64,000 nucleotides of DNA from Vitrella brassicaformis CCMP3155 (lineage: Eukaryota > Protista > Chromerida), in contig CDMY01000666.1 of assembly GCA_001179505.1 (NCBI GenBank), positions 62,001 to 126,000 on the forward strand, read 5' to 3'. The position numbers were made by a program, and so were the translations under genes. Positions 19,072 through 46,004 of the stretch are shown one piece after another. Below the pieces are notes generated by a model. That model was given only the letters and a program-made list of their open reading frames with translations. It had not been told where the DNA came from and did not search any database. Numbering within the stretch: the first letter of the stretch is position 1; each line of letters opens with the position of its first letter.

Positions 19072-21347
19072 TCATCCATTCACAATCGCACAGGCCACAA
19101 CCGACACAGCATCCCAAAGGAAGACGCTCAGCTCTCGTCTCGACCGCCAGATAAGACGCGACGAGAGCTCATCGGCTACAGTAGAAATGAGCTAGGTGTC
19201 ACTTGACACGAATCTACACGTCACTCCCACGGATGTTTCCTATGTGTGTTTGTGTCCCGTCGGTTACCTCCTCTTCGTCCGACTCGACGTCGATTACCTC
19301 CTCCTCAGACCACTCGAGTTCGTCGTCGAATATCCTCCTGCAGCCCACACAGGCACAATGGTGAGTTCGATCAAGTTTGTGACCATTGGGTGTGGCTGAC
19401 TCTCTGTGGCATCGAATGAGGTCGTTGAGGATGAAGGTAAACGGCCGGATGACGAGTAGGCTGTGCTCTGGAGTGAGCTCCTTCTTCTTCATGGGCCTGC
19501 TGATCATTGGGTACACATCATGCTCCTCGACACTAAACCAACGCACACACCCACAAACAGCAGTGAGAGGTCGCATGCTAGAAATGCCTTCTACCTACCT
19601 TCCTCTCTTTATCACTCCCTTCACTTACCCCAAGGCCGCAGAGACCTTCTCGACCGTCTTGTCGACCTTAGCTGATTCAAGTATGAGGAGCGGGTCGCTG
19701 TAGATGTGCTGGCGGTCATTGTCCTCAATGATCTCGTCGCACTTGTTGAGGATGACGATGACCTTCACATCGTGATCTGCACACACACCACACAAACGAA
19801 TAGACAGATCGACCGATGCAGACAGACGGACATCTTCGTTGGCTTGTTGATAGCTTAGTTGTTGTTGATGTTGTTGCTTGTTGCTCCTGCTTACAGCGGA
19901 CGACCCTGGCCATCTTGCGGTAGTGTTCGAGGCCAGTCGGGCTCGTGGCGGTCGCGTCCATGACCAGGAACACGGCCTTGGGGCGGTAGCGCTCCAACTC
20001 GGCCGTAGTGCCAACGCTGGTCAGCGGAACCACACACACACGAGAGACACGCAAAGGACAGAGGACAGAGACTTGACTGATGATCTGTGTGAAAGGGTGG
20101 GTGGGCCCGTACCGCAGGAGGGAGAGGATTTGCTCCTCCTCCCTGGTGAGTTCTTGCCCCATGCACTTCTTGGCCTGTATGTCCTTGATCTCGTCATAGT
20201 CGATGGTCATGTTGAACCCGTTTTTGATCCGCCCCTCGACGAGTAGCAGCAGCAGACGCAAGTTTCTATGCTCCAGACCTACGCACACACCGCACGGACA
20301 CACACACGCACACATACATACATACAGACAGAGAGAGAGAGGCAGACACACGCAGACAGGTGGGGAGACAGTATGCACACCTTTGCCGTCCTGCAGACAG
20401 AGGTACTTGTTGCCGCCGAGCATGTACGTCTCCAATGTGGACGTGACGCTGCTATAGTGGCCCCCGGGAGCCGTCGGGCCGTACTGCAGGCAGGTCGCAC
20501 ACACACATATACACGCACACACACACACACACACACAACACACACACATACATATGCAACACGCACTATGTGGGCGCGTCAGCGTGGGTCTGACCGTGAC
20601 ATAGTTGTCGTAAGGGCCCATGGCATTCATGATACTGCGGATGTGGTTGCACAATGTCGTCTTGCCAACGCTGAACAGCAGCACATGAACAAGAAGTCTG
20701 GTGGGCAGTGTGCTGCGTGGCATACGTACCCCGGCTCCCCAGCAAACAGAATGGTGACCGGCCTGCCCTTGTACTCCCTGACGAAGTCCTTGATCTGCTT
20801 CACTCTGGAACACAGACACACCCTGGACGAAACCCTGACTTCTCTTCCCTCACGCCATGTTGTCTTGCCTGCAGAGGTCGCTCGTGTTGCCCAGCCCACG
20901 GTTGCCGGAGAACCTCGGCAACAAGCTGCAAGACTCGCGGTTACCAAAGACTTCTCGACCACCACTGTGTGCAAAGGAAACACTCAGAGAAGCCATCGGT
21001 GCGTGGTCGCTGATCTGGGTCTCGACCTCTGCAGATTCCGCACGTCAGCGAAAAATATGATCTTGTCCCTGCAGTCCTCTGTGCACAGCGGGCGGAGCTC
21101 GTCGTCGATCTCCACGGCATACCCACCATGGCCATCTCCGAAGACGGGACGGCCGTCGAGCAGACCAACGGCTCTGCGGGGCCCGTCTGGCTCCTGACCA
21201 AAACACCATTCAGAGCAGACAGAAGAGAGGAGGGCTGCCATCCTTAAAATTTCCGCTCACCCCATTCGACGGCGCCTCGCCTGACGACGACGGGACTCTG
21301 CCATCGCTGTCGGGCGGCCTGACCTCCTGATAAGCAGCATTCTCCAT
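19072..21347 (-). CDS. P-loop GTPase paralogue G1 (IFI44-like family), with extra N-terminal module
   Basis: G1 motif ILFAGEPG|VGKTT, switch VTSTLETY, G3 CLQDGKG, KAVFLVMDAT, G4 VILNKCD, C-terminal VYPMISRP..ELTPEHSLLVIRPF, acidic exon. Probable last exon LISTVADELSSRLIWRSRRELSVFLWDAVSVVACAIVNG*. Start taken at MENAAYQEV. Confidence 0.8.
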
Positions 21348-21571
21348 CACTGTGTAAGGCTGCCTCCCACGATCAACGCAACGACGAGACCTGCGGACCG
21401 ACCGCACAGGAAGCGACACTGTCAGGCGGGAAGTGGGCTGTGTCTGCTCACCTGGTGAACACAGATGAATATTCGGATCCCTCGGCTGCTGCCATATCAC
21501 ATATTTTTCGTCGTATAACTTGTCTAACGGTCGGGAAGAAATAATCAGTGCAAAGCTCGTCTGCATGTGCG

Positions 21572-21635
21572 TGTGTCTGTGCTCGTAGGCCATCCCCCGC
21601 CCGTGTGGTCCCCCGCCGCCCGAGACTGACGGATG
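21572..21635 (+). other. Duplicated copy of the SF3B5 terminal exon with intact AG acceptor
   Basis: gctcgtag|GCC ATC CCC CGC CCG TGT GGT CCC CCG CCG CCC GAG ACT GAC GGA TGG matches 18795-18860 (AIPRPCGPPPP[K/E]TDG). The stop TAG has become TGG. Confidence 0.85.
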
Positions 21636-21954
21636 GCGCGCGCGTCGATGCAAAAGAAAGTGGCGCACAGTGCCAGCGGACCTGATTGATGTTGGCTCAA
21701 TCACATTGCCATGTGCGCACTGCTTTTGTTACAAAATCGCATTCAGGCATACAGATGGTAGTCCAAGCATGCATACACACAGGCAGTCACGGGAAAGGAG
21801 GAAAAACGACTCGATCCATTCCCACAACCACACCATACCACACTACACCAGACAGGCCCCTGCAGCAAAAAGTAGTAGCCATACTGAGGTGACTCAGGCA
21901 CAGACACATCCATTCTCATCGTGACCAAAAACGAGCTAGCGAGTTACTACTGAG

Positions 21955-23526
21955 TTACTGCGAACGATTCCTCTCACTGTGCTCACTGACGGCTATCTCG
22001 GCAATCTTGTCAAAATCTTTGTGCGGCACATCTGCCAGATCGAATGCGCGGTCCCTGTTCTTTCTGACTACATGGTCATACACACTCCCGTATGGCCACG
22101 CCTTCTTGATGTCCTTCATGACGGGGTGCGGGATGCCCGGCTGGTTCTCCTTTGGCGCCGAAGGGGCCGTCCATACCGTGACGAACCACACAGGGATGGA
22201 GATGTAGGGGCACTGAGCCACCGACTCGATGTCGGACGCACCGTCAACCAGACCAAGGACGTCTGCATGTGTCGCGAAACCTGACACATGCACACGCTGA
22301 GTACTCACACGATTCCCTTTGTGTGTTTGCTGAGTACGAGTACCTGAGAGGATGGCCTGTGAGAACGCCTCGATCTCTGTGCGAGGCGAGTTGTCCCGGC
22401 AGATGACCATGCCCATCAAATTGTTGGGATTGTCGGTCAAAATCTCCAGCTGGATACCCTTCTTCAAGAAGGCCTCCGTGAGGTACGGCTTCAGCGCCCC
22501 GAGAAACGCCTGCTGAGCTCCACTCTGCACAAACCACGCACACACGGACGTGAAGGTGCGTGCATACGCGTGCGTGAGTGCACTGACCGTCTTGTAGGCT
22601 CCGTTTGAGTAATGCAGCCCCAATCGGCACACTTGAGCCCCCCGAGGCTTTGGCGGTGTCACCGTCTTACGCTTCTCGTGAGATGGTGCTGTTGACGTCC
22701 CGATCTGCAGCCGCACTTCACTCGTCGGCGTCTCGGTCTCCCTCGTCCGGGGCGTCAATGAGCCCTGCGATGATGACGATGTCGTAACGCTCTCCTCTTG
22801 GGCCTGCACAGACACACACACACACACACGCACACGCACACGCACACGCACACACATGCACACACATGGCACCGTGGAGGCATTTTTGTGTCGCTTGCTA
22901 ACCTCAGCCACTTCCAGCTGGGATGCAACCTCAGTTGGAGGAGGGGTGAAGGCCCAGTTCTCAGGCACCGCACTCGAGATCCTGGGGTCGCCGAGGAAGT
23001 CGATGATGTCGATTCTGGGCATCGTTTGCCTCCCCTCCAGACGGATGTACTGCCCGACGGCGCCATCGACGTAGTGCTCACGGTTCGGCTTGTCCGTATA
23101 CTCCCAATCTGGCCCTCGCTTGTACTTGTACTGCAGAACACCATCCTTGCGCAGGGTGACCTGGATCTCCTTCTGATACATGACGCCCCTGGGGCAAGCA
23201 CAACAGAGAGACGTACAGGAAGCTTCAAATTATGCCGCCGCATCACTCACTTACTTGAGGCAGCATCTTTCGTCCTTCTCATTGAAGGTCGCCTCCGGCC
23301 TTGGTGCCTCATCCCAGTGGCCTGAGCGCACACACAGAAAGGTACGATTTCCCCTCCTCATACGCTAAGCTCGCTTACCGATCTCTGGGCAGTTGCCGTG
23401 CACACTCAACGGGAAAGTGGTGCTGGGCTTCTCTCCCACAGGCAGGAAGACTCTGAACCTCAACGTCACTTTGTTGGTCTTTGGCGTCCAACTTGAAGGC
23501 ATGATAGCAGGTAGCAAATTGCCCAT
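21955..23526 (-). CDS. C1: N-terminal Met-Gly protein with CBM20-like (starch-binding) domain, S/T-rich linker and uncharacterised C-terminal alpha/beta domain
   Basis: MGNLL start. VTLRFRV..LSVHGNCPEIG|HWD..K|GVMYQKEIQVTL..LQYKYKRGPDWEYTDKPNREH fits the CBM20 pattern (GxxxELGxWD, YKY, WE..NR). C-domain RLGLHYSNG..GMVICRD..IPVWFVTVW..QPGIP..AWPYGSVYDHV. Confidence 0.75.
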
Positions 23527-23614
23527 GTTTGCGTCGTTTCCTCTCTTTTGCGCACTTCCACGCGTCATATGGCTGGTGCCATGGGCAGCCTACTATCAGG
23601 GCGCCTCTCTTCGC

Positions 23615-23690
23615 GCCCGCATCCGCATCCGCAGCTGATCCGCACTGATCCGCAGCTGATCCGCAAACTGATCCGCGTCCGCAGCTGTTC
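23615..23690. repeat. Tandem (GATCCGCA/ATCCGC)-core repeat in the C1/G2 divergent intergenic region
   Basis: ccgcatccgcatccgcagctgatccgcactgatccgcagctgatccgcaaactgatccgcgtccgcagctg read directly. Confidence 0.85.
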
Positions 23691-23843
23691 CGCACAGAAG
23701 GGCAGCCAGAGATCTCTCAGCAAGCAGTCGTATCTGCTCGCCCCTTTTCATTCGTGTGCGCCTTTTCTCTTGGCCTCCTCCAGCCCTGCCTTCATCCGGC
23801 AGTATTTTGTCCCTTGTCCGTTGATTGAGATCAAGTAATCGGA

Positions 23844-25913
23844 ATGAGCGGCCTCCGCACCACACGCATCGGCTCCAGCAGCATCCTGCCTACGACCGAA
23901 GGCTCTCGGGGTCTGGGCGAGTCAAGCGAAGTCATCACGCAGGAGGACCACGCCGAGTAAGGGGGGAGGGAGAGATGGGAGCTTTGGGTGCTGTACGCTG
24001 AATCGTCCTCCCTTCTGCAGTGTCAAGGAGGTCAAGACCTTTGTCAAGGGGTACCAGGGAGACCTCGCCATCATCCTCGTGACGGGAGCACCAGGGTAGG
24101 CAGCGAGTGGCTACTTGGCATTCTGTCAAGTGTGGGCCTTTGATGTGTTTGTTCAGCGTGGGCAAGTCGACTCTGTGCAACCACATGCGTAGTATCATGA
24201 ACGCCAAGGGCCCGTGTGACAACTATGTCTCGGTACACCCACGGCCAAGCCACACACATCGTTGTATGTCTGTCTGTCTGTCTGTCTGCCTACTGCTGTG
24301 CGTCCGTCGCTTCCTTCGGCTGCAGTATACCCGTACGCGCCCCGGTAGCCACTCCGGCAGCGTCACTTCCCTGTTCGAGACGTACACACTCGGCGGCAAT
24401 GAGCGCGTCTGTCTGCAGGACGGCAAAGGTATGTGATGCGTGCTTGCGAAGAACTGATGCCTCCAGCTCTCCTGTGTGTCTGTGTGTGTGTCCGTGCGTG
24501 TGAGTGTAGGTCTGGAGGATGGTGATTTGGGTTTGCTGGAGCTGGCCATCACGGGTCGGCTGATGAACAACTTCGACATGACGGTCAGCATGGACGCCAT
24601 CAAGGAGGCTCAGGCCAAGAGGGGGGCCAATAAGCGGCTCACCGAAGAGGACAAGAAAATCCTCGACCGCCTGCGGTGAGTAGCACCCACAAACGATGGC
24701 CCATTCATTTGGCACGTTCATCTTGATGTGTGGGTGGGTGTGTTGGTGTGTGGGTCGCTTTCTTTCTTCACGCAGGTCGGGGAACGACGATGATCCTGAG
24801 CTGGAGCGTTTCCGTCCCAAGGCCGTGTTCGTGGTGCTCGATGCGACGGCCCTGGGCGACCGAGAGGGCGAGGCCATGGTCAGGTACCGTGACATGGTCG
24901 AGAAGATCCACGGTAAGTCGGTCACATGCGGAAGAGAATGTGAGTGGTCTGCTCATCTCATCTTTCTCGCCCGTGTACTTGTGTGTCATTCCTCGTGTGT
25001 GTGTGTATGTGTGTGTGAGCAGAGCACGAGATCAAGGTCTGCATCATTCTCAACAAGTGCGACGGGGTCATCGGGGACCTCGAGGAGCGCAGGGCCATCT
25101 GGAACGACCCCGTCTCTCTCCTGGACAGACCTGAGGTGGAGAGGCTGATCGAGGAGGTCTCGGAGGACCTGGGGTGAGTGAGCACAAAAGAGGCGTGAGT
25201 GAGTGCTTAGTCGACCTGTCTGTCATATGTCTGTGTCGTGACATGCAGCGTGGAGCCTTTCGACGTGTATCCGATGCTTGCTAAGCCCAAGAGGAAGGAA
25301 CTCAGCCCCGCACACAGCCTGCTCGTCATTCGACCGTTTGGCTTCATCCTCAGCGAGCTCAAGAAATGCGCTAGAGAGTGAGCATGCATAAGACACACAC
25401 GCATATGGGGTGCAATGGATGTGCCTCCGCTGTCTACAACGTATGTAATCCATGCAGAAGCGTGCACGACCCACAGGAGTGCGCCCCCGTGGCCGACGAC
25501 GAGTCCGACGACGAGGACGTAAGCTGATACGCACACTCGGGACACACGTCGTGTGCGCACTACTTTCTGCACGTATGTATGTCTGTGTGCTGCATCTCAA
25601 GTAGGGAGAGGTCGTCTCGTCTGATCAGCCGACCAAAGACGCGAGCGGCCAAGACAACCAACGCATTTTTGACCATCGCAGTTTCATTGACGTGTGCACT
25701 GTGGTGCTTGTCTTCTCTGCTTTCGTGCTGGCATTGCCACTGATCTTTTCCTGCGCTGCTGTCTACCGCTGGATGCACATGAACCGTGATGATGGTGCTG
25801 GGGGGCGGGCGAGCGCGATGCACAGCGTGACTTATCCCTTGGACGCACTGGATGAGGATGCGGCAAGGGAGATAGCACGCAATGGGCGCTACCTGGCAGC
25901 GCCACCATCATGA
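23844..25913 (+). CDS. P-loop GTPase paralogue G2 (IFI44-like), C-terminal transmembrane anchor
   Basis: MSGLRTTRIG..; IILVTGAPG|VGKST; SVTSLFETY; CLQDGKG; KAVFVVLDAT; IILNKCD; acidic exon; last exon with VCTVVLVFSAFVLALPLIFSCAAVY and DAAREIARNGRYLAAPPS*. All splice phases are compatible. Confidence 0.85.
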
Positions 25914-26853: not shown

Positions 26854-28988
26854 TCAAGCCGCACACCACAAACGGGCCCCGACCTTCTGGTGGTTTCTGC
26901 GCCTCTCTTCACTGACGGCTGTCTCCGCGATCCTATCAAAAAAGTGACGCGGCAAGTCCGCCATGTGGAGCGTACCATCCCTGTTCCTCCTGATCACGTG
27001 ATCGTAGACAGGGCCGTGTGGCCACGCCCGGCTGATGTCCTTCGCGACGTTGAGTGGGATGCCCGGCTGGCTGTCTGGCTTGGTCGTCCACACGGTCACG
27101 AACCAGATGGGAAGGCACGCGTAGGGGCACTGAGCCAACGACTCAGTGTCCACCGCACCATCCGACAGACCCAGGGCTTCCGCGTGCGCCGTGAAGCCTG
27201 ATCCACGGACACATCACAGACGTGCAGCGAGGAACACTCGTGTCTCCGCCTGGCTTTGTGGGTGCGTCTTTCAGAGTACCCGACCTGAGAGGATTGCTTG
27301 TGAGAAGGCCCTTATTTCTGTACGAGACGTATAGTCCCGGCAGATGACGATGCCCATCAAGTGGTCAGGATTGTCCGTCAGGACTTCCAGACAGACGCCC
27401 TGCTTCACAAAGGCCTCCTTGAGGTGCGGCGTCAGGGCCTCGAGAAACGTCAGTTGGGACTCGGTCTGCACAATCGTACATATTCACCGACACGCACAAG
27501 CAAAGGTGTGACTATACACACATACATAGCGCCGATGCACTGACCGGCCCATTTGCTCCGTTTGCATAGTGCAGCCCCAATCGCCACGTCTGACTTCCCC
27601 CTTCGACCCTCTCGCCGCCGTCTCTCTCGGGCAGCGTGAGGGAAGCAGGCGATGGGAAAGCTGAAATGCTCTCCTCTGAGGCCTTCGCACACAGACACAC
27701 AAGGCAGGAGAGACGCAGTCCCCATGAGGGATTTGTTGCCACGACCTTGGGTCGGTAGGCTTCCAACTGGGGATCATCGTCATCCCCGGACCTGATGAAA
27801 CCACACATCGGACACACATCAGCGATCTGTGCACAGAGAAAACATCACACTGCGCACACATTGCCCTACCGCAAGAGTGACATCGCGTTCTCCTCCTCCC
27901 TGGTGAGCTTCTTTCCCAGGCCTTTGTTGAAATACATGTCCTTGATTCCTTCACAGCCGAGCTTCATGTTGAAGTTGTCTTTCATCCGGCCCTCCAAGTT
28001 CAGCTTCAGCAAACCCAAATCGCCATCCTCGATCTCCAGCCCTGCATACACACAGAGGCAGGCAGACATGCGTGCATTGTGATGATATGAGGGGTGCGTA
28101 AGACCCATATACGTCACGTACCTTTGCCGTCCTGCAGGGACACGTACTTGATGCTCACAAGTGGTGTGAAGGTCCGCGCATCACGTCGCCACGTCGTCTG
28201 AGCCCTCCCGCAGTTGTCCAGATGCGCATCATGCCTCGCCGCCAGGGAACCATTGGCAGAGGACGCTGGGATGCTCTCCTCTGGAGCCTGAGCACACACA
28301 CAGACAAGCACGAGAGAGATTCAGTTGCCAGCAACCAAGCAGGAGCCCAGCCTACCATTGCCACACCCGTCTTGGGCTCGGCCTCCGGCTGGACTTGTGT
28401 GATGGCGAAGCCCACGGGCATGGCAATTGAGTTGTTGGGGCTGCCGAGGAAGTCGAGGATGTCGATCGCGAGCGGCCCCTGCCTGCCCTTCAAGTAGTAC
28501 TGGCCCACATAGCGGTCGATGCAGTGCTCGCGGCTCGGGAGCCTGTCGTTGTACTCCCAGTTGTCGCCACACTTGTACTTGTACTTCAGCATGCAATCGT
28601 CAGGTAGGGTGACCGTGATCTCCTTCTGCCACATGAAGCCACTGGTAGCACAACAACACACACACACATAATTGGGCAATGTAGATGTGAGGTCGTCCTT
28701 ACTTGAGGCAGCGATGTTTCTCCTTCTCGGTAAAGGTGGCCTCCTTGGTCTGCTCATCCCAGTTGCCTGCACACAGCCGCACACAAAGCACACATTCCGC
28801 CTGTCCCCTCTCCCGAATTTTGGCATAGCTTCTCGTCGCACCCAGCTCAGGGCAGTTACCGCGAATGCAGAGGGGAGGGGGGTGCTGTTCCTGTGGCGTT
28901 TGTCAGGGTCGGTAAGGTGATTCTCAAATCCGGGAAGGAAGACGCGAAACCTCAACATCACCTTGTTGGCGGAAAGCTGGCCTCCCAT
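26854..28988 (-). CDS. C2: CBM20-like + alpha/beta-domain paralogue, chimeric (carries GTPase exons) and with an apparent frameshift in exon 1
   Basis: MGGQLSANKVMLRFRVFLP. The conserved LCIRGNCPELG motif is in a shifted frame after the G6 run at 28877-28882. Then GNWD..CLN|GFMWQKEI..LKYKY..WEY..SREH; C-domain WRLGLHYANG, GIVICRD, LPIWFVTVW, QPGIP, AWPHGPVYDHV. Confidence 0.7.
27745..28150 (-). other. GTPase-gene fragment (exons and introns) inserted inside C2, near-identical to G4 at about 32640-33035
   Basis: Encodes SLQDGK|GLEIEDGDLGLLKLNLEGRMKDNFNMKLGCEGIKDMYFNKGLGKKLTREEENAMSLLR|SGDDDDPQLEAYRP. Intron sequences are also shared with G4. Confidence 0.9.
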
Positions 28989-29061
28989 GCTTTCGTCCCC
29001 TTCCAGTACAGTGTATCAAGGGCGGCGTAAATTTGTCCCTTGCCGTTTGCGCAGATCAAGA

Positions 29062-31056
29062 ATGAGCGGCCCCCGCACGACACGCATCGGCTTCAGCAGC
29101 ATCCTGCCTACGACCGGAGGCTCTCGGGGTCTGGGCGACACGACCGATGCCATAACTCAGCAGGACAACGCATTGTGAGACCTCGGGAGGACAAAACGAG
29201 GGACACACACACACAGACACGCACACAGTGTCGTTTCGGTGGCGCAGGTTGAGGGATGTCAGGCGATTCGTCAGGGGGTACAAGGGCAAGCGTGTCATCA
29301 TCCTGTTGACCGGAGTGCCAGGGTAGCACACAGGAAGGACATCGTCCTATTTCTTGTGGTGGTCTTTCCTTTGTTCATTCAGCGTCGGCAAGACGACACT
29401 GTGCAACCACATCCGCAGTATAATGAACGCCAAGGGCCCGTACGACAACTATATCGCGGTAAGCGGCTCGCTCACCCTGTCAGTCACATCCTCCTTCGGC
29501 TGCAGTATTCCCGCACGGCTCCCGGCAGCCACTCAGGCAGCGTCACGGGCCTGTTCGAGACGTGGATGCTGGGCGGCAACGGGCGCGTCTGTCTGCAGGA
29601 CGGCAAAGGTATGCATGCAGTCCAATCGTTGTAGTCGCTCAGTCAGTCATCATGCCTTTCGCCGCCTTCATCGCGATCTTCTCTCTCTCGCTCTCTCTGT
29701 CTCTCTCTCTGTGTGTGTGTGTGCATGTGCAGGTCTTGACGAAGGCGACACGGACCTGCTGGATCTTGCCGTCACGGGCCGCCTGAGAAATGGGTATGAC
29801 ATGACGACTCCGATGGACAAGATCAAGGAGGTGCTGGCCAAGAAGGGCATGGGAAGGACGCTCACAGAGGAGGAAAAGAAGACCCTCGATCACCTGCGGT
29901 AGGCCTGGCCAGGCTGAATGTCTACACACGTTGTAAATCTAGTCATTCGACTCTGTGTGTGTGTGTGTGTGCTTGTTTTTCATTCAGGATGGGTGCTGAC
30001 GATGATCCCGAGTTGGAGTGTTTCCGTCCCAGTGCCGTGTTCGTGGTACTCGATGCGACGGCCATTGGTGACCGAGACGGCGTGACCATGGTCAAGTATT
30101 GTGACATGATCGAAGTCATCCACAGTTAGTAACGGCACAGTGGAGAAACTCGTTGCTGTGTCTTTCTGTCTCGTGTCTTGCCTTGTGTGCGTATGTGTGT
30201 GTATGTGTGTGTATGCAGAGCACAAGGTAAAGCTTTGCATCATTCTCAACAAATGTGACAAGCTCATCGACGACCCCAAGGAGCGCGACGCCATCTGGAA
30301 CGACCCCATGTCGATCCTGGAGAGACCTGAGGTGGAGAGGCTGATCGAGGAGGTCTCGGAGGACCTGGGGTGAGTGAGCACAAAAGAGGCGTGAGTGAGT
30401 GCTTAGTCGACCTGTCTGTCATATGTCTGTGTCGTGACATGCAGCGTGGAGCCTTTCGACGTGTATCCGATGCTTGCTAAGCCCAAGAGGAAGGAACTCA
30501 GCCCCGCACACAGCCTGCTCGTCATTCGACCGTTTGGCTTCATCCTCAGCGAGCTCAGGCGACGCTACAGAGAGTGAGCACGCAGCACAGCCACACCCTA
30601 CGGGCATTGCGATTGAATGCACTTTTCGTCTTATCATCCGCGTGAATGTGTGTGAATGTGTGTGTACACAGAGAGCTGTACGAACCAGGAGCGTACTCGG
30701 ACGTGGAGGACCCCGAGTCAGACGAGGAGGAGGTAAAGCGACATGACACACGCACGCGCCCATGGATGCACGCATGTCCTCTGTCTTGGACGGATTCTTC
30801 TCTCTCTGTACGTGTGTTGCCTCTCAAGTAGGGAGAAGTTGTCTTCTCTGGCACATGCCTCCTTGTTGACGTGTGCACGGCAGTGCTTGTATTCTCTGCT
30901 ATCGTGCTGGCGTTGCCATCGCCCTCCGCCTGTACTGCTATCTACCGTTGCAAAAACATCAGACGGTTCTCGGGAGGGGCGAGGGACATAGGACGCGCAA
31001 CTGAGGACACGACAGGCGAGAAACATGGATGCGTGTGTGTCCTGGCTGCCTGCTGA
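29062..31056 (+). CDS. P-loop GTPase paralogue G3 (IFI44-like), C-terminal hydrophobic anchor
   Basis: MSGPRTTRIG..; IILLTGVPG|VGKTT; SVTGLFETW; CLQDGKG; SAVFVVLDAT; IILNKCD; acidic exon; last exon VDVCTAVLVFSAIVLALPSPSACTAIY..CVCVLAAC*. Confidence 0.85.
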
Positions 31057-31917: not shown

Positions 31918-34056
31918 TCAGCAGGAGTCGTAGTCCGACTCGGGGTCGTCCTCTTCACCAGACGACATCTCATCGTCCATGTCGACCCGCTCCCTGCACG
32001 GAGGCCAACCAAGAACAGGTGCATGTGCTTGGATGCGTGCATGGCTCTGCTTTGCTGCATGCTCACTCTTCGTGCAGGCACTTGAGGTCGTCGAGGACGG
32101 ATGTGAAGGGTCGGATGACGAGCAGGCTGTGGTCGGGGTTGAGCTCCTTCCTCATGGGCTTCGAAATCATCGCGTAAACGTCCAAGAGCCCCACACTGCA
32201 CAAATGCATACACACGCAGAGCCGCGGTCGCACGTATTTCCTTTCATGCTGCCACTCCCTTTCCTTTCCTTTCCTCTCACCCCAGGGCCTCCGACACTTT
32301 CTCGCACTCCTCCGTGACCTTTGGTCTGTTGAGGATCGCCATGGGGTTGTTCATGAGGGCCTTGCGCTCCTCGGGGTCGTCGATGAGCTTGTCACATTTG
32401 TTGAGAATAATGCAAAGCTTTACCTTGTGCTCTAAATACACGCATACAGAGAAGAGGGAGAGAAACAGAGACATGAAGCGGGCAGATGCAGCACAGGGAT
32501 GAGCACATCACAACCACGACTACGAAGCAGCCTCTCTGCACTTGATTACTTACTATTGATCTCCTCAACCATCTTGCGGTAATTTTCGAGGCCACTCTCA
32601 CTCGTGGCAGCCGCATCGATGACCAGGAACACAACGTTGGGTCGGTAGGCTTCCAACTGGGGATCATCGTCATCCCCCGACCTGATGAAACCAAACCACA
32701 CATCGGACACACATCAGCGATCTGTGAGCGGAGAGAACATGACACTGCGCACACATTGCCCTACCGCAAGAGTGACATCGCGTTCTCCTCCTCCCTGGTG
32801 AGCTTCTTTCCCAGGCCTTTGTTGAAATACATGTCCTTGATTCCTTCACAGCCGAGCTTCATGTTGAAGCTGTTTTTCATCCGGCCCTCCATGGCCAGCT
32901 TCAGCAAACCCTCATCGCCACCGCCGATCTCCAGCCCTGTATACACACAGAGGCAGGCACACATGCGTGCATTGTGATGATATGAGAGGTGCGTAACACC
33001 CATATACGTCACGTACCTTTGCCGTCCTGCAGACATACGCGCTCGTTGCCGCCCAGCATGTACGTCTCAAACAGGGAAGTGACGCTGCCGGAGTGGCTGC
33101 CGGGAGCCGTGTGGGAATACTGCACACCCACACAACGCCACTAGGAAAGTGGAGGGCTTGCACTGGTTGCTCACTTCCACATATCGGCCGTGCGAGCCCT
33201 TGGCGCTCATGATGGATCGGCTGTGGTTGCAGAATGTCGTCTTGCCGACGCTGAATGAAGACAGCAAACAGTGTTTCAAAATGTGTGCGCCAGGCAATCA
33301 TCTTTATGCATCATACCCTGGCTCGCCAGTCACTATAATTTTGAGAGGCTTGCCCTTGTAGTCCCTGATGGAGCGCTTTTTCTCCTTCAACCTGCAGCCA
33401 CCAAAGAAAGGAACACAAGCCCAACATATACGTCTGGGGGGGGGAGCCACTATCACCTGAGACGTATGGGTGGGGATATCAGCGGGTCACGTGCCTGCAT
33501 CACCAGCCAGTCATACACAAGAGATGATATTGTGCAGAAGTGATTGAGTGTCGTGGAACTCGTGATGTACATGTGCCGACCATAGGAGCATCGTCGTCGG
33601 AGTCTTCCGCCATCGCCACATCCCCATCAGACACATGATTCATTAGCCCACTGCATAGAAAAATAAGCACACACCCACTACATTATCGCTAATCTCGCCA
33701 CTCTCTTCATCCCACCCACTTCTGCACGTGAGCGAAAACTATGATCTTGTCTTTGGCAGCGACCGGCAGCGGGCGGAGGAAGCCGTTGATCTCCACGGCA
33801 TACCCGCCATGGCCATCTCCATAGACAAAATGGCCGTCGAGCAAACCAACAACTCTCGGGGGCAAGCCTGGCTCCTGAATGACACACCATTCAGAACAGA
33901 CAGACCAGACAGGCAGGCATCAGAGACCGACAATCACCGTCGATGTATTTGCCTTTCTGTCTCAGTAGTGGTCACCTGTGCTGAATAGCCTGACGACGAT
34001 GGGGCTCTGCCGTCGCTGCCGGGCGGCCTGACCTCCTGATAGGCAGCATTCTCCAT
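31918..34056 (-). CDS. P-loop GTPase paralogue G4 (IFI44-like), shares the G1 N-terminal module; ends at the acidic exon; 5' end may extend to about 34380
   Basis: MENAAYQEVRPPGSDGR; EPGLPPRVVGLLDGHFVYGDGHGGYAVEING; IIVTGEPG|VGKTT; SVTSLFETY; CLQDGKG; NVVFLVIDAA; IILNKCD; ELNPDHSLLVIRPF; ..EDDPESDYDSC* (TGA 31918-31920). Confidence 0.8.
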
Positions 34057-36404: not shown

Positions 36405-36582
36405 ATCTGTCTGTCTGTCTGGCTGGCTGTCTGTCTGTCTGGCTGTCTGGCTGTCTGGCTGTCTGGCTGTCTGTCTGTCTGGCTGTCTGGCTGTCTGTCT
36501 GGCTGTCTGGCTGTCTGGCTGTCTGGCTGTCTGTCTGTCTGTCTGTCTGTCTCTCTGGCTCTCTGGCTGTCTGTCTGTATTC
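36405..36582. repeat. Compound (CTGT)/(CTGG) microsatellite
   Basis: About 180 bp of alternating ctgt/ctgg 4-mers read directly. It generates the spurious QTDR/CLAVWLS ORFs. Confidence 0.95.
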
Positions 36583-37349: not shown

Positions 37350-37959
37350 TCATTGGCTGCATCTATGGTACGTGTGCCCAATTTTATGGCGGCACGAGTA
37401 AGGAGACGAATGCGTCTCTCCACTTCTACGCCATACACACATACCCCCACATAGATAGATACATACATACATACATTCCGAACACGTCGCTGATGGCCAT
37501 TCCAGAACACTGCCCTCATGGATCGACAGTCAGTGGGCGAGGGAGTCCGTCAAGCGACGAGGTCGCTTTTTGCCTCTCCCTCATTTGTTCTGGCGTGTGT
37601 CTGCTGTGCGGTCGGCCCTTTCCTCTCTCCCTCTGCTGTCCTCATGTAATGTGCTGTGCTGTACATGGGCAGTTCTCTGTCCGCATGTCTGGACAAGGGT
37701 GAGTGATCAATTGCATAAGCGACTCTGACCGAATATGGTGCAAGTCATTTTTGGTGTCTCATCTGAATGGAATTCGACGCAGCCATACTCACATGAACTC
37801 ACACATCGTCACTTCCACGTAACCACCGCCTTGGCGCGTGCGGTGCTGGGGCCAGGAGTGGCGCCATTCGTACTCGACGAACGGGTAGAAGACCAGCAGC
37901 AGGATGGCGACAGTTCTGATGGCACGGACAGAGCGAAGGAGGGGGGCACACACACGTGA
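37350..37959 (+). pseudogene. Divergent or degraded 3' portion of the lineage-specific family also present at 56550-57979
   Basis: RHFHVTTALARAVLGPGVAPFVLD (37.8-37.9 kb) aligns with DRFPKTTRLARVALGRVAPFVFD. Nucleotide match gtggcgccattcgt. Upstream exons are only weakly recognisable. Confidence 0.5.
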
Positions 37960-38444
37960 ATGAGTGTATGGTACACACGAACAGAGACACAGACGCGCAT
38001 CTCCATTATGTGGCTTATGTATGGGTCAGATTCCACCACTGCTGGCAACGGTGATGGGGAAGATGTGATGTGGATGACGGGGTAATGTGACATTTATCGG
38101 TGGATCATGCTCAGGCGTACGTGCGTGCCACCTGTGATTTGTTTGGCTATGGCAGGGAGACATGAGGATCTCATTTTTGGTTGGTCGATACATACATTCA
38201 TTTATTCGCACATGCGTACATACATAGAAAAGCCAGAGACAGATGGCTACGCTGATTTCTCTTCGGGAGTATGTGCGTGTGAAGTGAATATGTTGGACAC
38301 TGGTGTTATGCAGTGAACATGTAAAGTGTACTGCCACGCGTAACAGAAGCTCATTCAGATAGACGAATGTCCGCACCACACCACATACAAGTCGAATCGC
38401 ATCACAGAGGAGAAAAGAGTATGACACCCAACAAAGACTGCCGT

Positions 38445-39962
38445 CTAGCCAGCTGTCCTTTGGCTGATAGCCGCCAAGGCGATCTCATCGAAAAGAGCAT
38501 GGGGCGCATCGGCCTTGTGGAGCGTCCCGTCCTTGGACATTCTGACCACGTGATCGTGGACAGTGCCGTGCCACCAGGCCTTCTTGATGTCGACGTTGTA
38601 CGGGATGCCCGGCTGGCTGCCAGGCGCATCCTTAAACGTGCTCAACAGCCACACAGGGAGACGCGCGTGGGGACACTCTCTCAGAGACTCAAGCGACACA
38701 GCATCACTCAAACCCAGCACTTGACTATTTGCTTTGAACCCTGATACACGGACAGACAGAGAGGAGTCACACGATTCCCTGAGCCTGTCTGGTCTGCTGA
38801 CTTGCTCGATTACCTGAGAGGATAGCGTCCCTTATCACCTCGTTCTTCGCGCGAGACGTGCGATCGCGACAGATTATGATGCCGACCAACTGGTCGGGAT
38901 CGTCCTTCAGAATCTCCACACGAATGCCCTTTTTCGCGAACGCCTCACAGATGTAGTCGCCAACATCCTTGGCAAATGCAAGCTGACTCTTCGTCTACAC
39001 GAGAAGCAACCAAGAAACAATGTGACACACACACACACACACACACAGAAAACGCCACAGACCCACCGCGGTTTTCTGTCCATTGGCGTAGTGCAGCAAC
39101 AATCGCACCGGCGGCGTCTGCGTCTCCTCGGTAGTCACTGGAGGCTTGAGTGCCGGCACTGTTGGGCGATTGAATCGTGTCGTAGCGACTCTGTCAGGGG
39201 CCTGAGAAGTGGACGACGGTCTCTTGGACACAGCACCTTGGTCCTGTGCACCCGCACACCCGTGGCTCTCTCGAGTGACAGACACATCTTGCTTGTGCTT
39301 CTCCCGTCCATCATCTGGGGTGAAGTCCCAGTTCAGCGTCGTCGCAAACGAATACCCGGTCTCGGCGGTCTCGCCAAGGATGTCGATAAACCGGAAAGTT
39401 GGAGGCCCTCGACGTCCCATCCCTATCGTGGTTGCATACTTGTTGGTGTACTGCCACACAGCTGTGCCGAGCGGCTGCTCACGGTCATCGCCATCATGCT
39501 CCCACTGCTCTTTGATCTTGTACTTGTAACGCAGAACACCGCTGTCGGGCACCGTGATGGTGATCTTCTTCTGGAACACAACGCCGCCCCTGGACACAGA
39601 CAAGTCAAGATCATTGAGATCTTTGACATCCTCTGCAGCTTCTCTCACTTGAGAACACATAGCGCCTCCTCCGTTGCGCCTCCTCCGTTGCATACATTTG
39701 TTCGTGAGGCTGGAGTGAAAGTGAAGGTGTTCTCCTTTGTGCGCTTATCCCAATTACCTGCATTCACACACGAACAGATCTCCACCTGCGCTTTGCCATT
39801 TTTAGCTTGCAAGAGACGCCGGGGAGAGGTACCAAGCTCTGGGCAGTTGCCGTGAATACTCACGAGGGAGTCTTTGTTGAGGTTCCCCCCAATCACAGCG
39901 AACCACACTTCCGCATGCTTCCCTGGAGATAGCTGATTTGCTGAGGATAACTGCGGCCACAT
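38445..39962 (-). CDS. C3: CBM20-like + alpha/beta-domain paralogue
   Basis: SIHGNCPELG|GNWD..K|GGVVFQKKITITVP..LRYKYKIKEQWEH..DREQ; RLLLHYANG; EAFAKKGIRVEILKDDPDQLVGIIICRD..DAILS; LPVWLLSTF..QPGIP..AWWHGTVHDHVVR. First ATG at 39962; GTG-GGA-GAT-CTT-CCA-GCC-ATC at 39986 matches the C1 N-terminus. Confidence 0.75.
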
Positions 39963-40029
39963 GAAGATGGCTGGAAGATCTCCCACTCTCACGGCTGCAG
40001 CGATGGGCGGAAAACGTGGACTTCCCAGT

Positions 40030-40095
40030 CCGCTTCCGATTCCTACTTCCGATTCCTACTTCCGATTCCGACTTCGGCTTCCGAGTCCGACTCGC
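40030..40095. repeat. Tandem (TTCCGA/TTCCTA) hexamer repeat in the C3/G5 divergent intergenic region
   Basis: tccgcttccgattcctacttccgattcctacttccgattccgacttcggcttccgagtccgact read directly. Confidence 0.85.
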
Positions 40096-40164
40096 TTGCC
40101 GCTGCGTGTCAGGATCATCCAGTCTGCGGTGCACGTTCTTGCATCATTGCGCGATTCATCCAGC

Positions 40165-40982
40165 ATGAGCAACGAAGCAGCACCCGCCAAGGCGAGAGCG
40201 GCGTTCAGCGAGGGACCTGGTCACACCCACACCACCAATACGCTGCCGCCGCCGCCCGCACCACCCATCGCCATGCTCCTGCCGACCGCGCCCGCGGGTG
40301 CAAGCAAGAAGCCACCGAAGGAGAGGAAGGAAGAAGCCCCCAAGAAGCCACCCACAGAGAGGAAGAACTGTCGAGCGTCCTCGGGCAGCTACGACTACAG
40401 GGGCATCTTGCCTCCCGAGTTTGGCGGCACTCGCGCGCAGGAAGATGACGACCCCGACAAGTTCAACAAGAAGTGAGTGTGGGCGAAGGGGCGAGGAGGG
40501 GGAGAAGGGGGAATGGATAGGGTCTGTCTCTATCCTTTCTTGGTGCTGCAGGTTGGTGGAAGTCAAGCGGACCCTCAAGGAGCACAAGGCATGTATTGTC
40601 AGCGTCCTCCTGGCTGGCGAGCCTGGGTATGATGAGCAATCAGCCAGGCTCAGCCCATCCTTCTGTTTCTTATCTATCGATCTCCTGCTCATTCAGGGTC
40701 GGCAAGTCGACGTTTTCGAACCGTGTGCGTTCCATTTTGAAGGCGAAGGGCCCGAGCGACAGTTTCGTCCAGGTGAGACACGCGGCGGCAGCACCATGCC
40801 TTCGTCATTCTGTTGTGATTGATCGTGTCCCGCGCTGCATGCAGTTCACTCGCACGACTCCGGGCAGCCATGAGGGCAGCGTCACATCGACGTTCGAGAC
40901 GTACGAACTCGGCGGCAACAAGCGTGTCCTTCTGCAAGACGGCAAGGGTGCGCACGGTCGCTCACGCTTCATCATAGCGATC

Positions 40983-41017
<35 letters not shown>

Positions 41018-41488
41018 TGTGTTTAGGTCTCGAGGATGGTGACACCGACCTGCTGGAGCTTGCCGTCACGGGCCGCCTGAGAAATGGGTATGACATGACG
41101 ACTCCGATGGACAAGATCAAGGAGGTTCTGGCCAAGAACGGCATGGGAGGCGCCGCTGATCTCACCAAGGAAGAGGAGAAGATCATCTCGCTCCTGCGGT
41201 AGGGACCACAGGACGCATTGCCACAGATCACACACAACAACTCGTCGCTGTCTGTGGGTTTGTCTGTCTGCATGTGTCAGACTTGGCAGTGAGGCCGAGT
41301 GTGAGGACTACCTCCCAAGGCCGTGTTCCTGGTCCTCGATGCTTCGAACACGGGCGACACATCCCTCGACCAGTATCAGGAGTTCGTCAGAGTGATCAAC
41401 AGTAAGTATCACACACACACACACACATACACGCGCAGACACTCAGACACACACTCCTTGACAACATGTCGGCCCTGCATCCCCCGCA

Positions 41489-41521
<33 letters not shown>

Positions 41522-42544
41522 ATGTGTGTGTGTAGAACACAAGGTGAAGCTCATGGTCATCCTCAACAAGTGCGACAAGATCATCGAGGGCCCCGAGGAG
41601 CGCAAGGCCGTCAGGGATGACCCCCTGTCGATCATCGATCATCCGGACATCGAAGACAAAGTCGAGGAGGTCTCGGAGACCCTGGGGTGGGCGATACGCA
41701 CGCAACACAAACATGTACACACACTACCCAACGACCTGTGCTGTTGGTGTGCATTCAGTGTTGAGAGCTACAACGTGTTTCCGATGATCAGCCGGCCCAG
41801 ATCGACGCAGCTGAGCCCCGCCCAAAGCCTGGTGATCCTGCGACCGTTTGCATTCGTCATGACCAACCTCAAACGCTGCAACAGGGAGTAAGCGAGCAGC
41901 ACACCGACTTGACAGGAAGCCACGCATTCTGTGTATATGTCACGTGGTGTGTGTGAATGTGTGTGTGTGTGGCGGCTGCAGGAAGCTGCTCGACCAAGAG
42001 GCAGTGGAGTACTCTGACGGCGAGGACATCGAGTCCGAAGATGAGGATGACGACGGAGTAGACGACACCGAAGACGACGCAGCGGTAGGTAGTGCACAAC
42101 ACACATCCACAGTGTCCATCGACCCATTCTTTTCTCCTCTGTGTGCTGCATATGAAGTAGGAAGACGTTCGCAGTACCCAAGACAATGCCAGACAAGACA
42201 ATCCCGCCCGCACCCAAGACACCCCCCCTATCGGCCAAGACACTCCCGCCCACACGCAAGACCCACTCTCTCTCAGCCAAGACAATCCCCGTCCCGCCCA
42301 AGACACACCTTCTCCCGCCCAAGGTCGTCCTTCGCCGAGAAGTCAACCCTTTTTTGCTCGGAGTTTCTTCTGCGTGTGTGCCGTCGCACTTGTGCTGGCT
42401 GCCATCGTGGTCTTTCGTTATGTACCGGCCCTTTCCTTCGCCTCTTTCCTGTGTGCCTGGCTGCCTTACACTCGACGCATGCATATGAATGATGACGTGG
42501 CCAGGGATATTGCACGGAACGGGCGCTATCTGCTGGCGCCATGA
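40165..42544 (+). CDS. P-loop GTPase paralogue G5 (IFI44-like), P/K-rich N-terminus, QD-repeat linker and C-terminal transmembrane anchor
   Basis: VLLAGEPG|VGKST; SVTSTFETY; LLQDGKG; KAVFLVLDAS; VILNKCD; QLSPAQSLVILRPF; acidic exon; last exon ..FFCVCAVALVLAAIVVFRYVPALSFASFLCAWL..DVARDIARNGRYLLAP* (TGA 42542-42544). Confidence 0.85.
42176..42325 (+). repeat. Degenerate 21-bp coding minisatellite (QDxPxxx heptads) in the G5 last exon
   Basis: caagac recurs about every 21 nt: TQDNARQDNPARTQDTPPIGQDTPAHTQDPLSLSQDNPRPAQDTPSPAQ. Confidence 0.8.

Positions 42545-45964: not shown

Positions 45965-46004
<40 letters not shown>

What the first reader, a model, noticed from the sequence alone, without database searches (positions are those of the whole stretch)
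19072..42544. Five-copy expansion of GTPases resembling the IFI44/IFI44L fold in a non-animal eukaryote
Seen: all five copies keep G1 (GxPG|VGK[T/S][T], split by a shared intron), a switch Thr (SVT..FET), G3 (QDGKG) and G4 (NKCD). From memory, order and spacing also match human IFI44 beyond the G motifs: G..GKS.F.N.VRS(I/V); DxxGL followed by 'L..(I/V).G.(L/I)...Y....P'; 'AVF.V.DA' vs HCVAFVFDAS; 'VEEVS..LG' vs KLEEVQRKLG; and C-terminal 'EL.P.HSLL.IRPF..IL..L' vs ELDPVKDVLILSALRRML. No TLDc domain is visible, and N-termini differ between copies. The family assignment is inference.
Basis: partly seen in the sequence, partly recalled or inferred. Interest (0 to 1): 0.75.

Follow-up and report, generated by a model that had tools for sequence, protein, structure and literature searches.

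The report
IFI44-like GTPase gene cluster in Vitrella
The alga Vitrella brassicaformis, a photosynthetic relative of malaria parasites, carries five intact, transcribed neighbouring genes for a GTP-binding protein whose only detectable full-length relatives are the animal antiviral-response proteins IFI44/IFI44L, which suggests that this poorly understood protein type is not confined to animals.

Summary
The window is Vitrella brassicaformis. It has five complete paralogous GTPase genes: C1 19217-21347 (-), C2 23844-25521 (+), C3 29047-30735 (+), C4 31921-34056 (-) and C5 about 40400-42084 (+). All keep G1, the switch-I Thr, G3 (DGKG) and G4 (NKCD). All share a phase-2 intron inside the P-loop, and all are spliced in transcript data. 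A sixth, partial copy lies inside a neighbouring gene.

The IFI44 reading is largely supported.
- No Pfam or NCBIfam model reaches its cutoff.
- A profile search of 1.84 billion proteins gave 29 hits. The named matches spanning much of the G domain are bivalve IFI44-like or G-domain proteins; most other hits match the P-loop only.
- Profile-profile comparison with animal TLDc+G IFI44 proteins gives 98% probability, E 1e-13, over 228 columns. The motif-free C-terminal part alone gives E 2e-4.
- IRG and AIG1 controls align over the P-loop only.
- Language-model neighbours are IFI44-like clusters, and so are the top predicted-structure neighbours (TM about 0.7).

Three caveats apply: identity is about 20-24%, the tree does not resolve the deep placement, and the good structure model used an alignment dominated by IFI44 rows. 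There is no TLDc domain. The function is unknown, and a defence role is only an analogy.

The parts
19217..21347 (-). GTPase copy C1. Core coding exons: 20868-20924, 20729-20806, 20595-20669 (VGKTT), 20379-20483 (SVT..QDGKG), 20112-20279, 19896-20015, 19628-19774 (NKCD), 19400-19531, 19217-19336. Upstream exons reach a MENAAYQEV start near 21347.
   Evidence: Exact match of the stored spliced protein P0001. cDNA contig L002. N-terminal similarity to P0004 at 21279-21347 and 21035-21199.
23844..25521 (+). GTPase copy C2, full length from Met (337 aa). Exons: 23844-23954, 24022-24096, 24158-24232, 24326-24430, 24509-24676, 24774-24911, 25022-25174, 25250-25378, 25459-25518.
   Evidence: Exact match of P0005. 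Two cDNA contigs, L004 and L005, from two samples.
29047..30735 (+). GTPase copy C3. Exons: 29047-29175, 29249-29323, 29384-29458, 29506-29610, 29732-29899, 29986-30123, 30221-30370, 30446-30574, 30673-30732.
   Evidence: Exact match of P0003. cDNA contig L001.
31921..34056 (-). GTPase copy C4. Twelve coding exons, from 33976-34056 (Met) down to 31921-31992. G1 exon 33175-33249; G2/G3 exon 33015-33119; G4 exon 32280-32429.
   Evidence: Exact matches of P0002 and of the first 200 residues of P0004. cDNA contig L006.
40400..42084 (+). GTPase copy C5. Exons: ...40472, 40552-40625, 40696-40769 (VGKST), 40842-40949 (SVT..QDGKG), about 41026-41197, 41280-41399, about 41535-41685 (NKCD), 41758-41887, 41982-42084. 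The 5' end is not defined.
   Evidence: Stop-free exon translations. GT..AG joints in spliced contigs of runs X1, X2 and X7. P0006 is the spliced C-terminal 131 aa.
27545..28137 (-). Sixth, partial GTPase copy, running from LQDGKG through ...EAYRPK. It has no G1, G2 or G4. It is spliced into the middle of the neighbouring C-family gene (26857-28988).
   Evidence: Exact matches of P0004 and P0007 pieces. 93% DNA identity to C4 over 403 bases, 27740-28137 against 32630-33032.
21925..23181 (-). C-family gene 1 (UniRef names a relative 'CBM20 domain-containing'). It lies head-to-head with C2.
   Evidence: ORF and similarity. It sits on one cDNA contig with C2, in divergent orientation (L004). No Pfam hit.
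26857..28988 (-). C-family gene 2, the chimera that holds the GTPase fragment. It lies head-to-head with C3.
   Evidence: P0007, and P0039 = CEM29104.1. Exon matches.
38460..39693 (-). C-family gene 3. It lies head-to-head with C5.
   Evidence: ORFs and tblastn similarity to the C-terminal part of P0004.

Best explanation
The region holds a lineage-specific cluster of five intact, transcribed paralogues, plus one captured fragment, of a TRAFAC-class GTP-binding protein in Vitrella brassicaformis. Its G domain is a remote homologue of the IFI44/IFI44L-type G domain of animals. It has no TLDc domain.

Shown:
- Each protein has a helix-strand-P-loop start (GxPGVGK[ST]T), a switch-I Thr (SVT), a DxxG (DGKG) followed by Leu rather than the catalytic Gln of Ras, a canonical guanine-specificity motif (NKCD), and a roughly 85-residue C-terminal extension ending in a long helix and an acidic tail.

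Inferred:
- The proteins bind GTP/Mg2+ and act as nucleotide-dependent switches. Hydrolysis would depend on a partner or on dimerisation, as in other GTPases with a hydrophobic residue at that position.
- The cluster grew by old duplications, with later local gene conversion. Three copies are paired head-to-head with an unknown gene family, which suggests co-regulation.
- A stress or defence role like that of animal IFI44 is possible, but it rests on analogy only.
For: Organism and expression:
- UniRef and NCBI name the matching proteins as Vitrella.
- Spliced cDNA contigs exist for C1-C4. Spliced contigs cover C5.

Motifs and the shared intron.

No curated family fits:
- Best Pfam and NCBIfam scores are below cutoff and cover only the P-loop or G4 region.
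- The PDB sequence profile search finds only P-loop matches.

IFI44 link:
- Exhaustive HMMER of 1.84 billion representatives gives 29 hits at E<=1e-3. Those I checked that match only the P-loop region are multi-domain AAA+ proteins, one tandem IRG and one multi-AIG1 protein.
- Matches covering half or more of the G domain are P0029 and P0030 (Mya arenaria 'IFI44-like'), P0009 (bivalve multi-G-domain protein), P0027, P0028, P0008 and P0032.
- P0027's relatives are TLDc+G proteins named IFI44/IFI44-like in Lingula, Owenia and the fish Astyanax.
- hhalign of four Vitrella proteins against 11 animal IFI44 proteins: probability 98.1%, E 1e-13, 228 columns, 24% identity. Against the fish G domain alone: E 5e-11, 220 columns.
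- Controls: IRG 44 columns, AIG1-type 23 columns.
- By pieces: the post-G4 piece gives E 1.9e-4 at the collinear place.
- An animal IFI44 HMM scores the Vitrella proteins at 23-37 bits across the whole domain and does not report the three AAA+ decoys at E<=10.
- Language-model neighbours of two paralogues are IFI44-like clusters, scores 0.96-0.97.
- The AF2 model (pLDDT 82, pTM 0.83) has listed Atlas neighbours that are mostly IFI44/IFI44L/TLDc clusters: TM 0.69-0.73, 243-253 residues aligned.
- Solved GTPases align for 143-201 residues with a flat Z of 11.6-13.7.

Selection and history:
- Pairwise dN/dS is 0.53-0.62 (NG86) and 0.27-0.29 (YN00).
- The four full-length modelled copies form one clade at 100/100 support.
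Against: - Database-wide E-values for the IFI44-like hits are marginal (3e-9 to 8e-4). Identity is only about 16-24%.
- The middle third of the domain gives no significant match on its own (E 0.02-0.08).
- The tree leaves the position of the Vitrella clade relative to animal IFI44, P0008, P0032 and the IRG outgroup unresolved.
- The confident structure model was made from an alignment in which 20 of 25 rows are non-Vitrella, mostly IFI44-like, so the Atlas result is partly circular. The model from Vitrella rows alone was poor (pLDDT 56).
- G3 is DGKG rather than DTMG, G4 is NKCD rather than TKxD, and no TLDc domain is present.
- No biochemical or expression-response data exist. For human IFI44 itself, RSV restriction did not depend on the predicted GTP-binding region (PMC7459546), so even the animal mechanism is unknown.
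Confidence: 0.75

Rival explanations
1. A lineage-specific TRAFAC GTPase with no special relationship to IFI44. Under this reading the resemblance reflects generic G-domain ancestry plus chance or convergence in the C-terminal helices.
For: - The best curated-model hits are generic (RsgA, EF-Tu, Era, EngA) and of similar bit score to the IFI44 HMM for some copies. For example, P0003 scores 23.1 bits against IFI44 and 24.7 bits against AAA_18.
- The deep tree nodes are open.
- The middle region is not significant alone.
- Solved-structure ranking is flat across many GTPase families.
Against: - The generic hits cover only about 20-60 residues, whereas the IFI44 alignments cover 217-228 collinear columns.
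- In a library that holds all GTPase families, the named matches covering half or more of the G domain were IFI44-like or bivalve G-domain proteins.
- The motif-free C-terminal piece matches at the collinear place with E 1.9e-4.
- Two independent language-model searches point to the same clusters.
Confidence: 0.17
2. The family reached Vitrella by ancient horizontal transfer from an animal, or from a common donor, rather than by vertical descent from an early eukaryote. Vitrella lives in association with corals (my own knowledge, not tested here).
For: - The distribution is patchy. No hit at E<=1e-3 carried the name of another alveolate or alga, although most hits are unnamed and several were not looked up.
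- The word search found only Vitrella's own copies.
Against: - The Vitrella clade sits on a long stem outside the animal clade rather than nested within it.
- Identity to any animal protein is at most about 23%.
- The genes have host-like GC content and many introns with the genome's typical TG/CA-rich sequence.
- Environmental relatives of unknown origin exist: P0008 from a metatranscriptome and P0032 from a metagenome.
Confidence: 0.06
3. The copies are decaying duplicates (pseudogenes), not functional genes.
For: - NG86 dN/dS of 0.53-0.62 is fairly high.
- One copy is only a fragment.
Against: - All five full copies have stop-free exons, conserved intron positions and all G motifs.
- All are found as correctly spliced transcripts.
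- dN/dS is below 1 in every pair, and YN00 gives 0.27-0.29.
- About 90 columns are invariant among four copies.
Confidence: 0.02

Closest known systems
IFI44 / IFI44L family of animals (interferon-induced protein 44; TLDc + G domain; no dedicated Pfam model matched the G domain here)
   Same: - Collinear G domain of about 260 residues. It starts with a helix and the first strand, followed by GxxGxGK[ST][ST](F/L)xN..(R/N)S(I/V).
- Switch-I S(L/V)T..(F)..Y.
- DxxG(L)E with Leu after the Gly.
- A G(H/R)(V/L).N.F motif after switch II.
- A hydrophobic strand ...V(F/V)V.DA...
- [NT]KxD.
- A C-terminal ...VS..LGV....V.P... segment and a final amphipathic helix.
- Lineage-specific expansion is also hinted at in bivalves, with a multi-G-domain protein and several Mya loci and isoforms.
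   Different: - No TLDc domain.
- G3 is DGKG, not DTMG. G4 is NKCD, not TK(I/V)D.
- The segment between switch II and the next strand is about 20 residues longer.
- There is an acidic C-terminal tail.
- Identity is about 20%.
- The host is a chromerid alga.
- No interferon system and no expression-response data.
Era/EngA/EngB (MMR_HSR1) ribosome-associated GTPases
   Same: Core G fold; they are the best solved-structure matches (EngB Z 13.7, EngA Z 13.3). A hydrophobic residue replaces the catalytic Gln. Weak Era/EngA model hits fall around G4.
   Different: - MMR_HSR1 scores 14.8-17.4 bits, below the 21.9 cutoff, and covers the P-loop only.
- Only 143-161 of 289 residues superpose on EngB and EngA.
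- No KH or second G domain was detected.
Immune GTPase families expanded in tandem: IRG (IIGP), GIMAP/AIG1
   Same: Tandem, lineage-specific expansion of paralogues under relaxed constraint, with variable termini.
   Different: - Sequence similarity is limited to the P-loop: hhalign 44 and 23 columns.
- Pfam IIGP scores 15.2 bits against a cutoff of 24; AIG1 is not listed among the Vitrella hits shown.
- GIMAP2 gives TM 0.41.

Membership tests
IFI44/IFI44L-type G-domain family | Full-length, collinear profile similarity of the G domain to bona fide (TLDc+G) IFI44 proteins, stronger than to other GTPase families | tested here: met
   hhalign gives probability 98.1%, E 1e-13, 228 columns. Against fish IFI44L alone: E 5e-11. 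IRG and AIG1 controls align over the P-loop only. The named matches covering half or more of the G domain in the exhaustive HMMER search are IFI44-like or bivalve G-domain proteins.
IFI44/IFI44L-type G-domain family | Similarity outside the generic G1-G4 motifs (C-terminal extension) | tested here: met
   The post-G4 piece alone gives E 1.9e-4 and is collinear with IFI44 profile columns 401-460. Atlas models align 243-253 of 289 residues, against 143-201 for solved GTPases. The middle piece alone is not significant (E 0.019).
IFI44/IFI44L-type G-domain family | N-terminal TLDc domain (canonical vertebrate architecture) | tested here: not met
   No PF07534 hit. hhalign of the C4 N-terminus against the TLDc-bearing profile gives probability 0.2%. 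Several animal proteins annotated IFI44-like also show no TLDc hit: P0029 and P0030 are 288-294 aa and have none among their Pfam hits.
IFI44/IFI44L-type G-domain family | Monophyly with animal IFI44 to the exclusion of other GTPase families | tested here: inconclusive
   The Vitrella clade has 100/100 support and the animal clade 82/86, but the node joining them with P0008, P0032 and the IRG outgroup is open, and a long-branch warning was issued.
IFI44/IFI44L-type G-domain family | Induction by infection or interferon-like signalling; antiviral or antiproliferative activity | not testable with these tools
   The only evidence is for animals, from the literature (PMC7459546; PMC13319465).
P-loop GTPase (TRAFAC class), GTP-specific | G1 GxxxxGK[ST], switch-I Thr, G3 DxxG and G4 NKxD all present | tested here: met
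   Present in all five copies and invariant in the alignments. The G fold is supported by Z 11.6-13.7 to many solved GTPases.
MMR_HSR1 / Era-EngA | Pfam PF01926 or NCBIfam Era/Der models above cutoff | tested here: not met
   PF01926 scores 17.4 and 14.8 bits against a cutoff of 21.9 and does not appear among the 25 listed hits for P0003. Era scores 24.5 bits against 237, and EngA 24.5 against 306.7.
IRG (IIGP) and AIG1/GIMAP | Pfam PF05049 or PF04548 above cutoff, or a profile alignment beyond the P-loop | tested here: not met
   IIGP scores 15.2 bits against a cutoff of 24; AIG1 is not listed among the Vitrella hits shown. hhalign aligns 44 and 23 columns only.

The most novel reading that the evidence does not exclude
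IFI44-type GTPases are not an animal invention but an older eukaryotic module. Under this reading the Vitrella cluster is a diversifying, defence-like GTPase array. It is co-regulated through bidirectional promoters with an unknown gene family (labelled CBM20-like by UniRef), with which it has even exchanged exons. It would then offer a simple unicellular system for working out what the IFI44 G domain does.
Probability: 0.2. Interest if true: 0.75.

Novelty: new variant of a known kind. Interest (0 to 1): 0.58.

Why it matters
IFI44 and IFI44L are among the most consistently induced antiviral-response genes of animals, yet their biochemical mechanism is unknown and I found no solved structure that matches them. 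In the paper searches I ran, none of the papers listed described relatives outside animals; that is not proof that none exists.

A divergent but recognisable family in a chromerid alga has three consequences:
- It suggests that this G-domain type is not confined to animals, or else points to an old transfer.
- It shows which positions are conserved across a very deep split: the P-loop surroundings, S-V/L-T, DxxG-L-E, the G(H/R)x..N.F motif, and the ...LGV....V.P... segment with the final helix.
- It offers a TLDc-free, small, expressed set of proteins for biochemical work.

The head-to-head pairing with another unknown family, and the exon-shuffled chimera, are testable hints of a functional partnership.

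Tried and rejected
- Exon-by-exon Pfam scans of window ORFs gave nothing significant.
- Pfam and NCBIfam scans of spliced database models gave only sub-threshold P-loop or G4 hits.
- The PDB sequence profile search gave only P-loop matches, such as MeaB and adenylate kinase.
- Word-based protein searches found only Vitrella's own copies.
- A metagenome DNA-pattern scan returned one locus, L003. It encodes a 1051-aa protein that shares only the P-loop region, and I set it aside as not informative.
- The first AF2 model, from four Vitrella rows, was too poor to search with (pLDDT 56).
- Foldseek against the PDB gave only generic GTPases at TM about 0.4.
- The tree with IRG and AIG1 outgroups did not resolve the deep placement and raised a long-branch warning.
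- YN00 dN/dS failed numerically for four of six pairs.
- Literature searches for IFI44 relatives in protists listed nothing relevant.
- AAA+ kinship was rejected. The many long AAA+ hits match only query positions about 10-90, around Walker A, repeated over their tandem domains. The IFI44 HMM does not report the three AAA+ proteins tested.
- TLDc in the N-termini was rejected.
- A Pfam CBM20 match for the neighbouring family was not found; that label is UniRef's only.


Full report
**What is there.** The window has about 57% G+C and is intron-rich, with TG/CA microsatellites in its introns. A six-frame motif scan finds VGK[ST][ST], SVT..[FL]ET, QDGKG and NKCD once each at five loci, with an extra QDGKG at 28120-28134.

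A word-based protein search with a read-through ORF of copy 1 returned four spliced proteins. One is named Vitrella brassicaformis by UniRef. Earlier notes of this scan on the same genome also say Vitrella, and NCBI's CEM29104.1 from Vitrella CCMP3155 matches the neighbouring chimeric gene.

Stored spliced proteins map exactly onto the window:
- P0001 = C1
- P0005 = C2 (full length, 337 aa from Met)
- P0003 = C3
- P0002 = C4
- P0006 = the C-terminal 131 aa of C5

tblastn shows the five full copies and one partial copy at 27536-28165.

**Shared intron and integrity.** In all five copies the exon ending ...G.PG stops at GG|GTA. The next exon begins after TTCAG| with C or G and then GTn GGC AAG. 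The intron therefore splits the last Gly codon of the P-loop in phase 2 at the same place. Exon boundaries fall at the same alignment positions in C1-C4. C5's exons are stop-free.

**Expression.** C1-C4 lie on intron-free cDNA contigs of two JGI samples: L001, L002, L004, L005 and L006. For C5, contigs of three public runs skip 40473-40551, 40626-40695 (the P-loop intron), 40770-40841, 41198-41279 and 41686-41757. All joints have GT..AG ends. A fourth run holds the unspliced DNA. All five genes are therefore transcribed and spliced.

**Divergence.**
- Protein identity is 52-73%.
- DNA identity is 65-78%.
- Two patches suggest gene conversion or a recent copy. The partial copy is 93% identical to C4 over 403 bases. 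C3 and C5 are 85% identical over exon 5.
- Pairwise dN/dS is 0.53-0.62 by NG86. It is 0.27-0.29 by YN00 where that method converged. This indicates purifying but fairly relaxed selection.
- The four full-length modelled copies form one clade at 100/100 support, so at least these four copies duplicated within this lineage.

**What family.** No Pfam or NCBIfam model reaches its cutoff. The best hits are RsgA (24.5 bits), EF-Tu (23.3 bits), and Era and EngA (24.5 bits each), and they cover only the P-loop or the G4 region. A profile search of PDB sequences gives only P-loop matches.

I then ran the exhaustive HMMER search with a profile of three copies against 1.84 billion representative proteins. 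I did this because the family scans left the protein open. It gave only 29 hits at E<=1e-3. Four of these are Vitrella's own proteins.
- Of the long multi-stretch hits, the sixteen I scanned are fourteen tandem AAA+ proteins, one multi-AIG1 protein and one tandem IRG. Two others (P0010, P0015) were not scanned. All match only query positions about 10-90, around Walker A, repeated over their domains.
- The hits covering half or more of the G domain are:
  - P0029 and P0030, named IFI44-like in the clam Mya arenaria
  - P0009, a bivalve protein with several such G domains
  - P0027 and P0028
  - two environmental proteins, P0008 and P0032
- P0027's own relatives carry TLDc (PF07534) plus this G domain. 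They are named IFI44 or IFI44-like in Lingula, Owenia and the fish Astyanax.

**Profile tests with controls.**
- hhalign of the four Vitrella proteins against 11 animal TLDc+G proteins gives probability 98.1%, E 1e-13, 228 aligned columns and 24% identity. Vitrella 47-310 aligns with IFI44 profile columns 218-460.
- Against the fish G domain alone: E 5e-11 over 220 columns.
- The two non-IFI44 GTPases that had scored best against the Vitrella profile align only over the P-loop. The IRG aligns over 44 columns and the AIG1-type protein over 23.
- Cutting the Vitrella alignment into pieces:
  - G1-G3 piece: E 1e-6
  - piece after NKCD, which has no G motif: E 1.9e-4, at the collinear place
  - middle piece: E 0.019, not significant alone
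- An HMM of the animal family scores the Vitrella proteins at 23-37 bits, in two collinear pieces across the domain. It does not report the three AAA+ proteins tested.
- P0008 links both sides. It gives E 1.7e-12 to the Vitrella profile and 4.7e-7 to the IFI44 profile.

**Alignment-independent and structural evidence.**
- Language-model feature searches with two different paralogues return the same neighbours: chordate and mollusc clusters named IFI44-like or unnamed G-domain proteins, at 0.96-0.97.
- AF2 with only Vitrella rows was poor (pLDDT 56).
- With 25 rows, including IFI44-like G domains, the model reached pLDDT 82 and pTM 0.83.
- Its listed neighbours among ESM-Atlas representatives are mostly IFI44, IFI44L or TLDc clusters, at TM 0.69-0.73 with 243-253 of 289 residues aligned.
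- Solved structures give only TM 0.39-0.44 by Foldseek. VIA-align gives a flat Z of 11.6-13.7 over 143-201 residues for many TRAFAC GTPases, including EngB, EngA, RagD, EF-Tu and Arl13B.
- Caveat: the good model's alignment is dominated by IFI44 rows, so the Atlas match is partly circular. I count it as consistent rather than independent. The secondary-structure order is the same in both models.

**What it is not.** No TLDc domain is present. The tree does not resolve whether the Vitrella clade is sister to animal IFI44. The deep node is open and a long-branch warning was issued. The Vitrella clade is not nested in any animal subclade, which argues against recent transfer.

**How it probably works.** The following is inference from sequence and from general GTPase knowledge.
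- All four nucleotide motifs are intact, and NKxD predicts guanine specificity.
- The residue after DxxG is Leu. The Ras-type catalytic Gln is therefore absent, and hydrolysis would need a partner, a dimer interface or a residue supplied from elsewhere.
- The C-terminal extension ends in a long helix (model residues 261-287) followed by an acidic, disordered tail.
- The N-termini differ between subgroups and may direct partners or localisation.
- A defence or stress role is suggested only by analogy. The analogies are the tandem diversification, the IFI44 kinship, and IFI44 induction in antiviral programmes of cnidarians (PMC13319465).
- In human cells the restriction of RSV did not need the predicted GTP-binding region (PMC7459546). 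The animal mechanism therefore gives little guidance.

**Surroundings.** Three members of an unknown 'C family' lie head-to-head with C2, C3 and C5. The C family has no Pfam hit, and UniRef calls one member CBM20 domain-containing. One cDNA contig spans such a divergent pair (L004).

The second C-family gene contains the partial GTPase copy in frame. The transcript-derived protein P0007 reads C-family N-terminus, then LQDGKG...EAYRPK, then C-family C-terminus. This fragment lacks G1, G2 and G4, so it cannot bind nucleotide by itself.

**Rules followed.** C5 was assessed exon by exon, through P0006 and through reads.

**Verdict.** The IFI44-type assignment is supported as remote homology of the G domain, with confidence about 0.75. 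Function remains unknown. As far as my searches reach, this family has not been described outside animals.

Noticed in passing
window 26857-28988 (-), GTPase fragment at 27545-28137: Exon-shuffled chimera: C-family N-terminus, then a GTPase fragment running from G3 to '...EAYRPK', then the C-family C-terminal domain. It is supported by the transcript-derived protein P0007 and by NCBI CEM29104.1 (P0039). The fragment is 93% identical in DNA to C4 (27740-28137 against 32630-33032), so it is a recent copy or a conversion.
   Followed up: partly
P0004 (UniRef A0A7S1P094) against window 33015-34056 and 26857-28042: This 492-aa transcriptome protein joins C4's first exons (through LQDGKG) to the chimera's downstream exons, about 5 kb away on the same strand. 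The switch occurs in a stretch that is nearly identical in the two genes. It could be an assembly chimera or a real read-through or alternative splice; I did not resolve which.
   Followed up: partly
window 21925-23181, 26857-28988, 38460-39693 (all -): Three paralogues of an unknown family have a conserved C-terminal domain (...WFVTVWT...P..V.KDI..AWP.G.VYDHV.R...). Each lies head-to-head with a GTPase copy (C2, C3, C5). No Pfam hit; UniRef labels one member CBM20 domain-containing.
   Followed up: partly
window 45983-61609 (+): A second tandem family: four diverged copies (68-77% DNA identity) of an Armadillo-repeat protein (Pfam Arm, E 1e-10 to 4e-15).
   Followed up: partly
window 29691-29903 against 40983-41203: Exon 5 of C3 and C5 is 85% identical in DNA, against about 69% for the rest of these genes. 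This looks like local gene conversion between paralogues.
   Followed up: no
window 42084 (C5 3' end): Spliced contigs leave the window sequence at 42084 and continue with TAGGAAG.... P0006 ends ...DDAA. C5's stop codon therefore seems to be completed by a further downstream exon, meaning there is an intron at or near the stop.
   Followed up: no
window 18411-18860 (+) and L002 1594-1860: An SF3b10 (PF07189) splicing-factor gene lies tail-to-tail with C1. One cDNA contig spans both genes, so their 3' ends overlap or abut.
   Followed up: no
L007 (P0008) and L009 (P0032): Two environmental relatives of unknown organism. P0008 (428 aa, metatranscriptome, 43% GC) has an unknown 170-aa N-terminal domain and an NQCD G4. 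P0032 (525 aa, metagenome scaffold, 35% GC, no introns) has this G domain followed by a C-terminal RING finger.
   Followed up: partly
window 3256-7126 (-): Presequence protease-type M16 peptidase (Pfam Peptidase_M16, M16C_assoc, PreP_C) upstream of the cluster.
   Followed up: no
Atlas clusters: Among the language-model neighbours is a 55-member cluster whose commonest phylum is Streptophyta (labelled DUF815 / MMR_HSR1). This hints that related G domains may also exist in plants. No sequences were available to test it.
   Followed up: no
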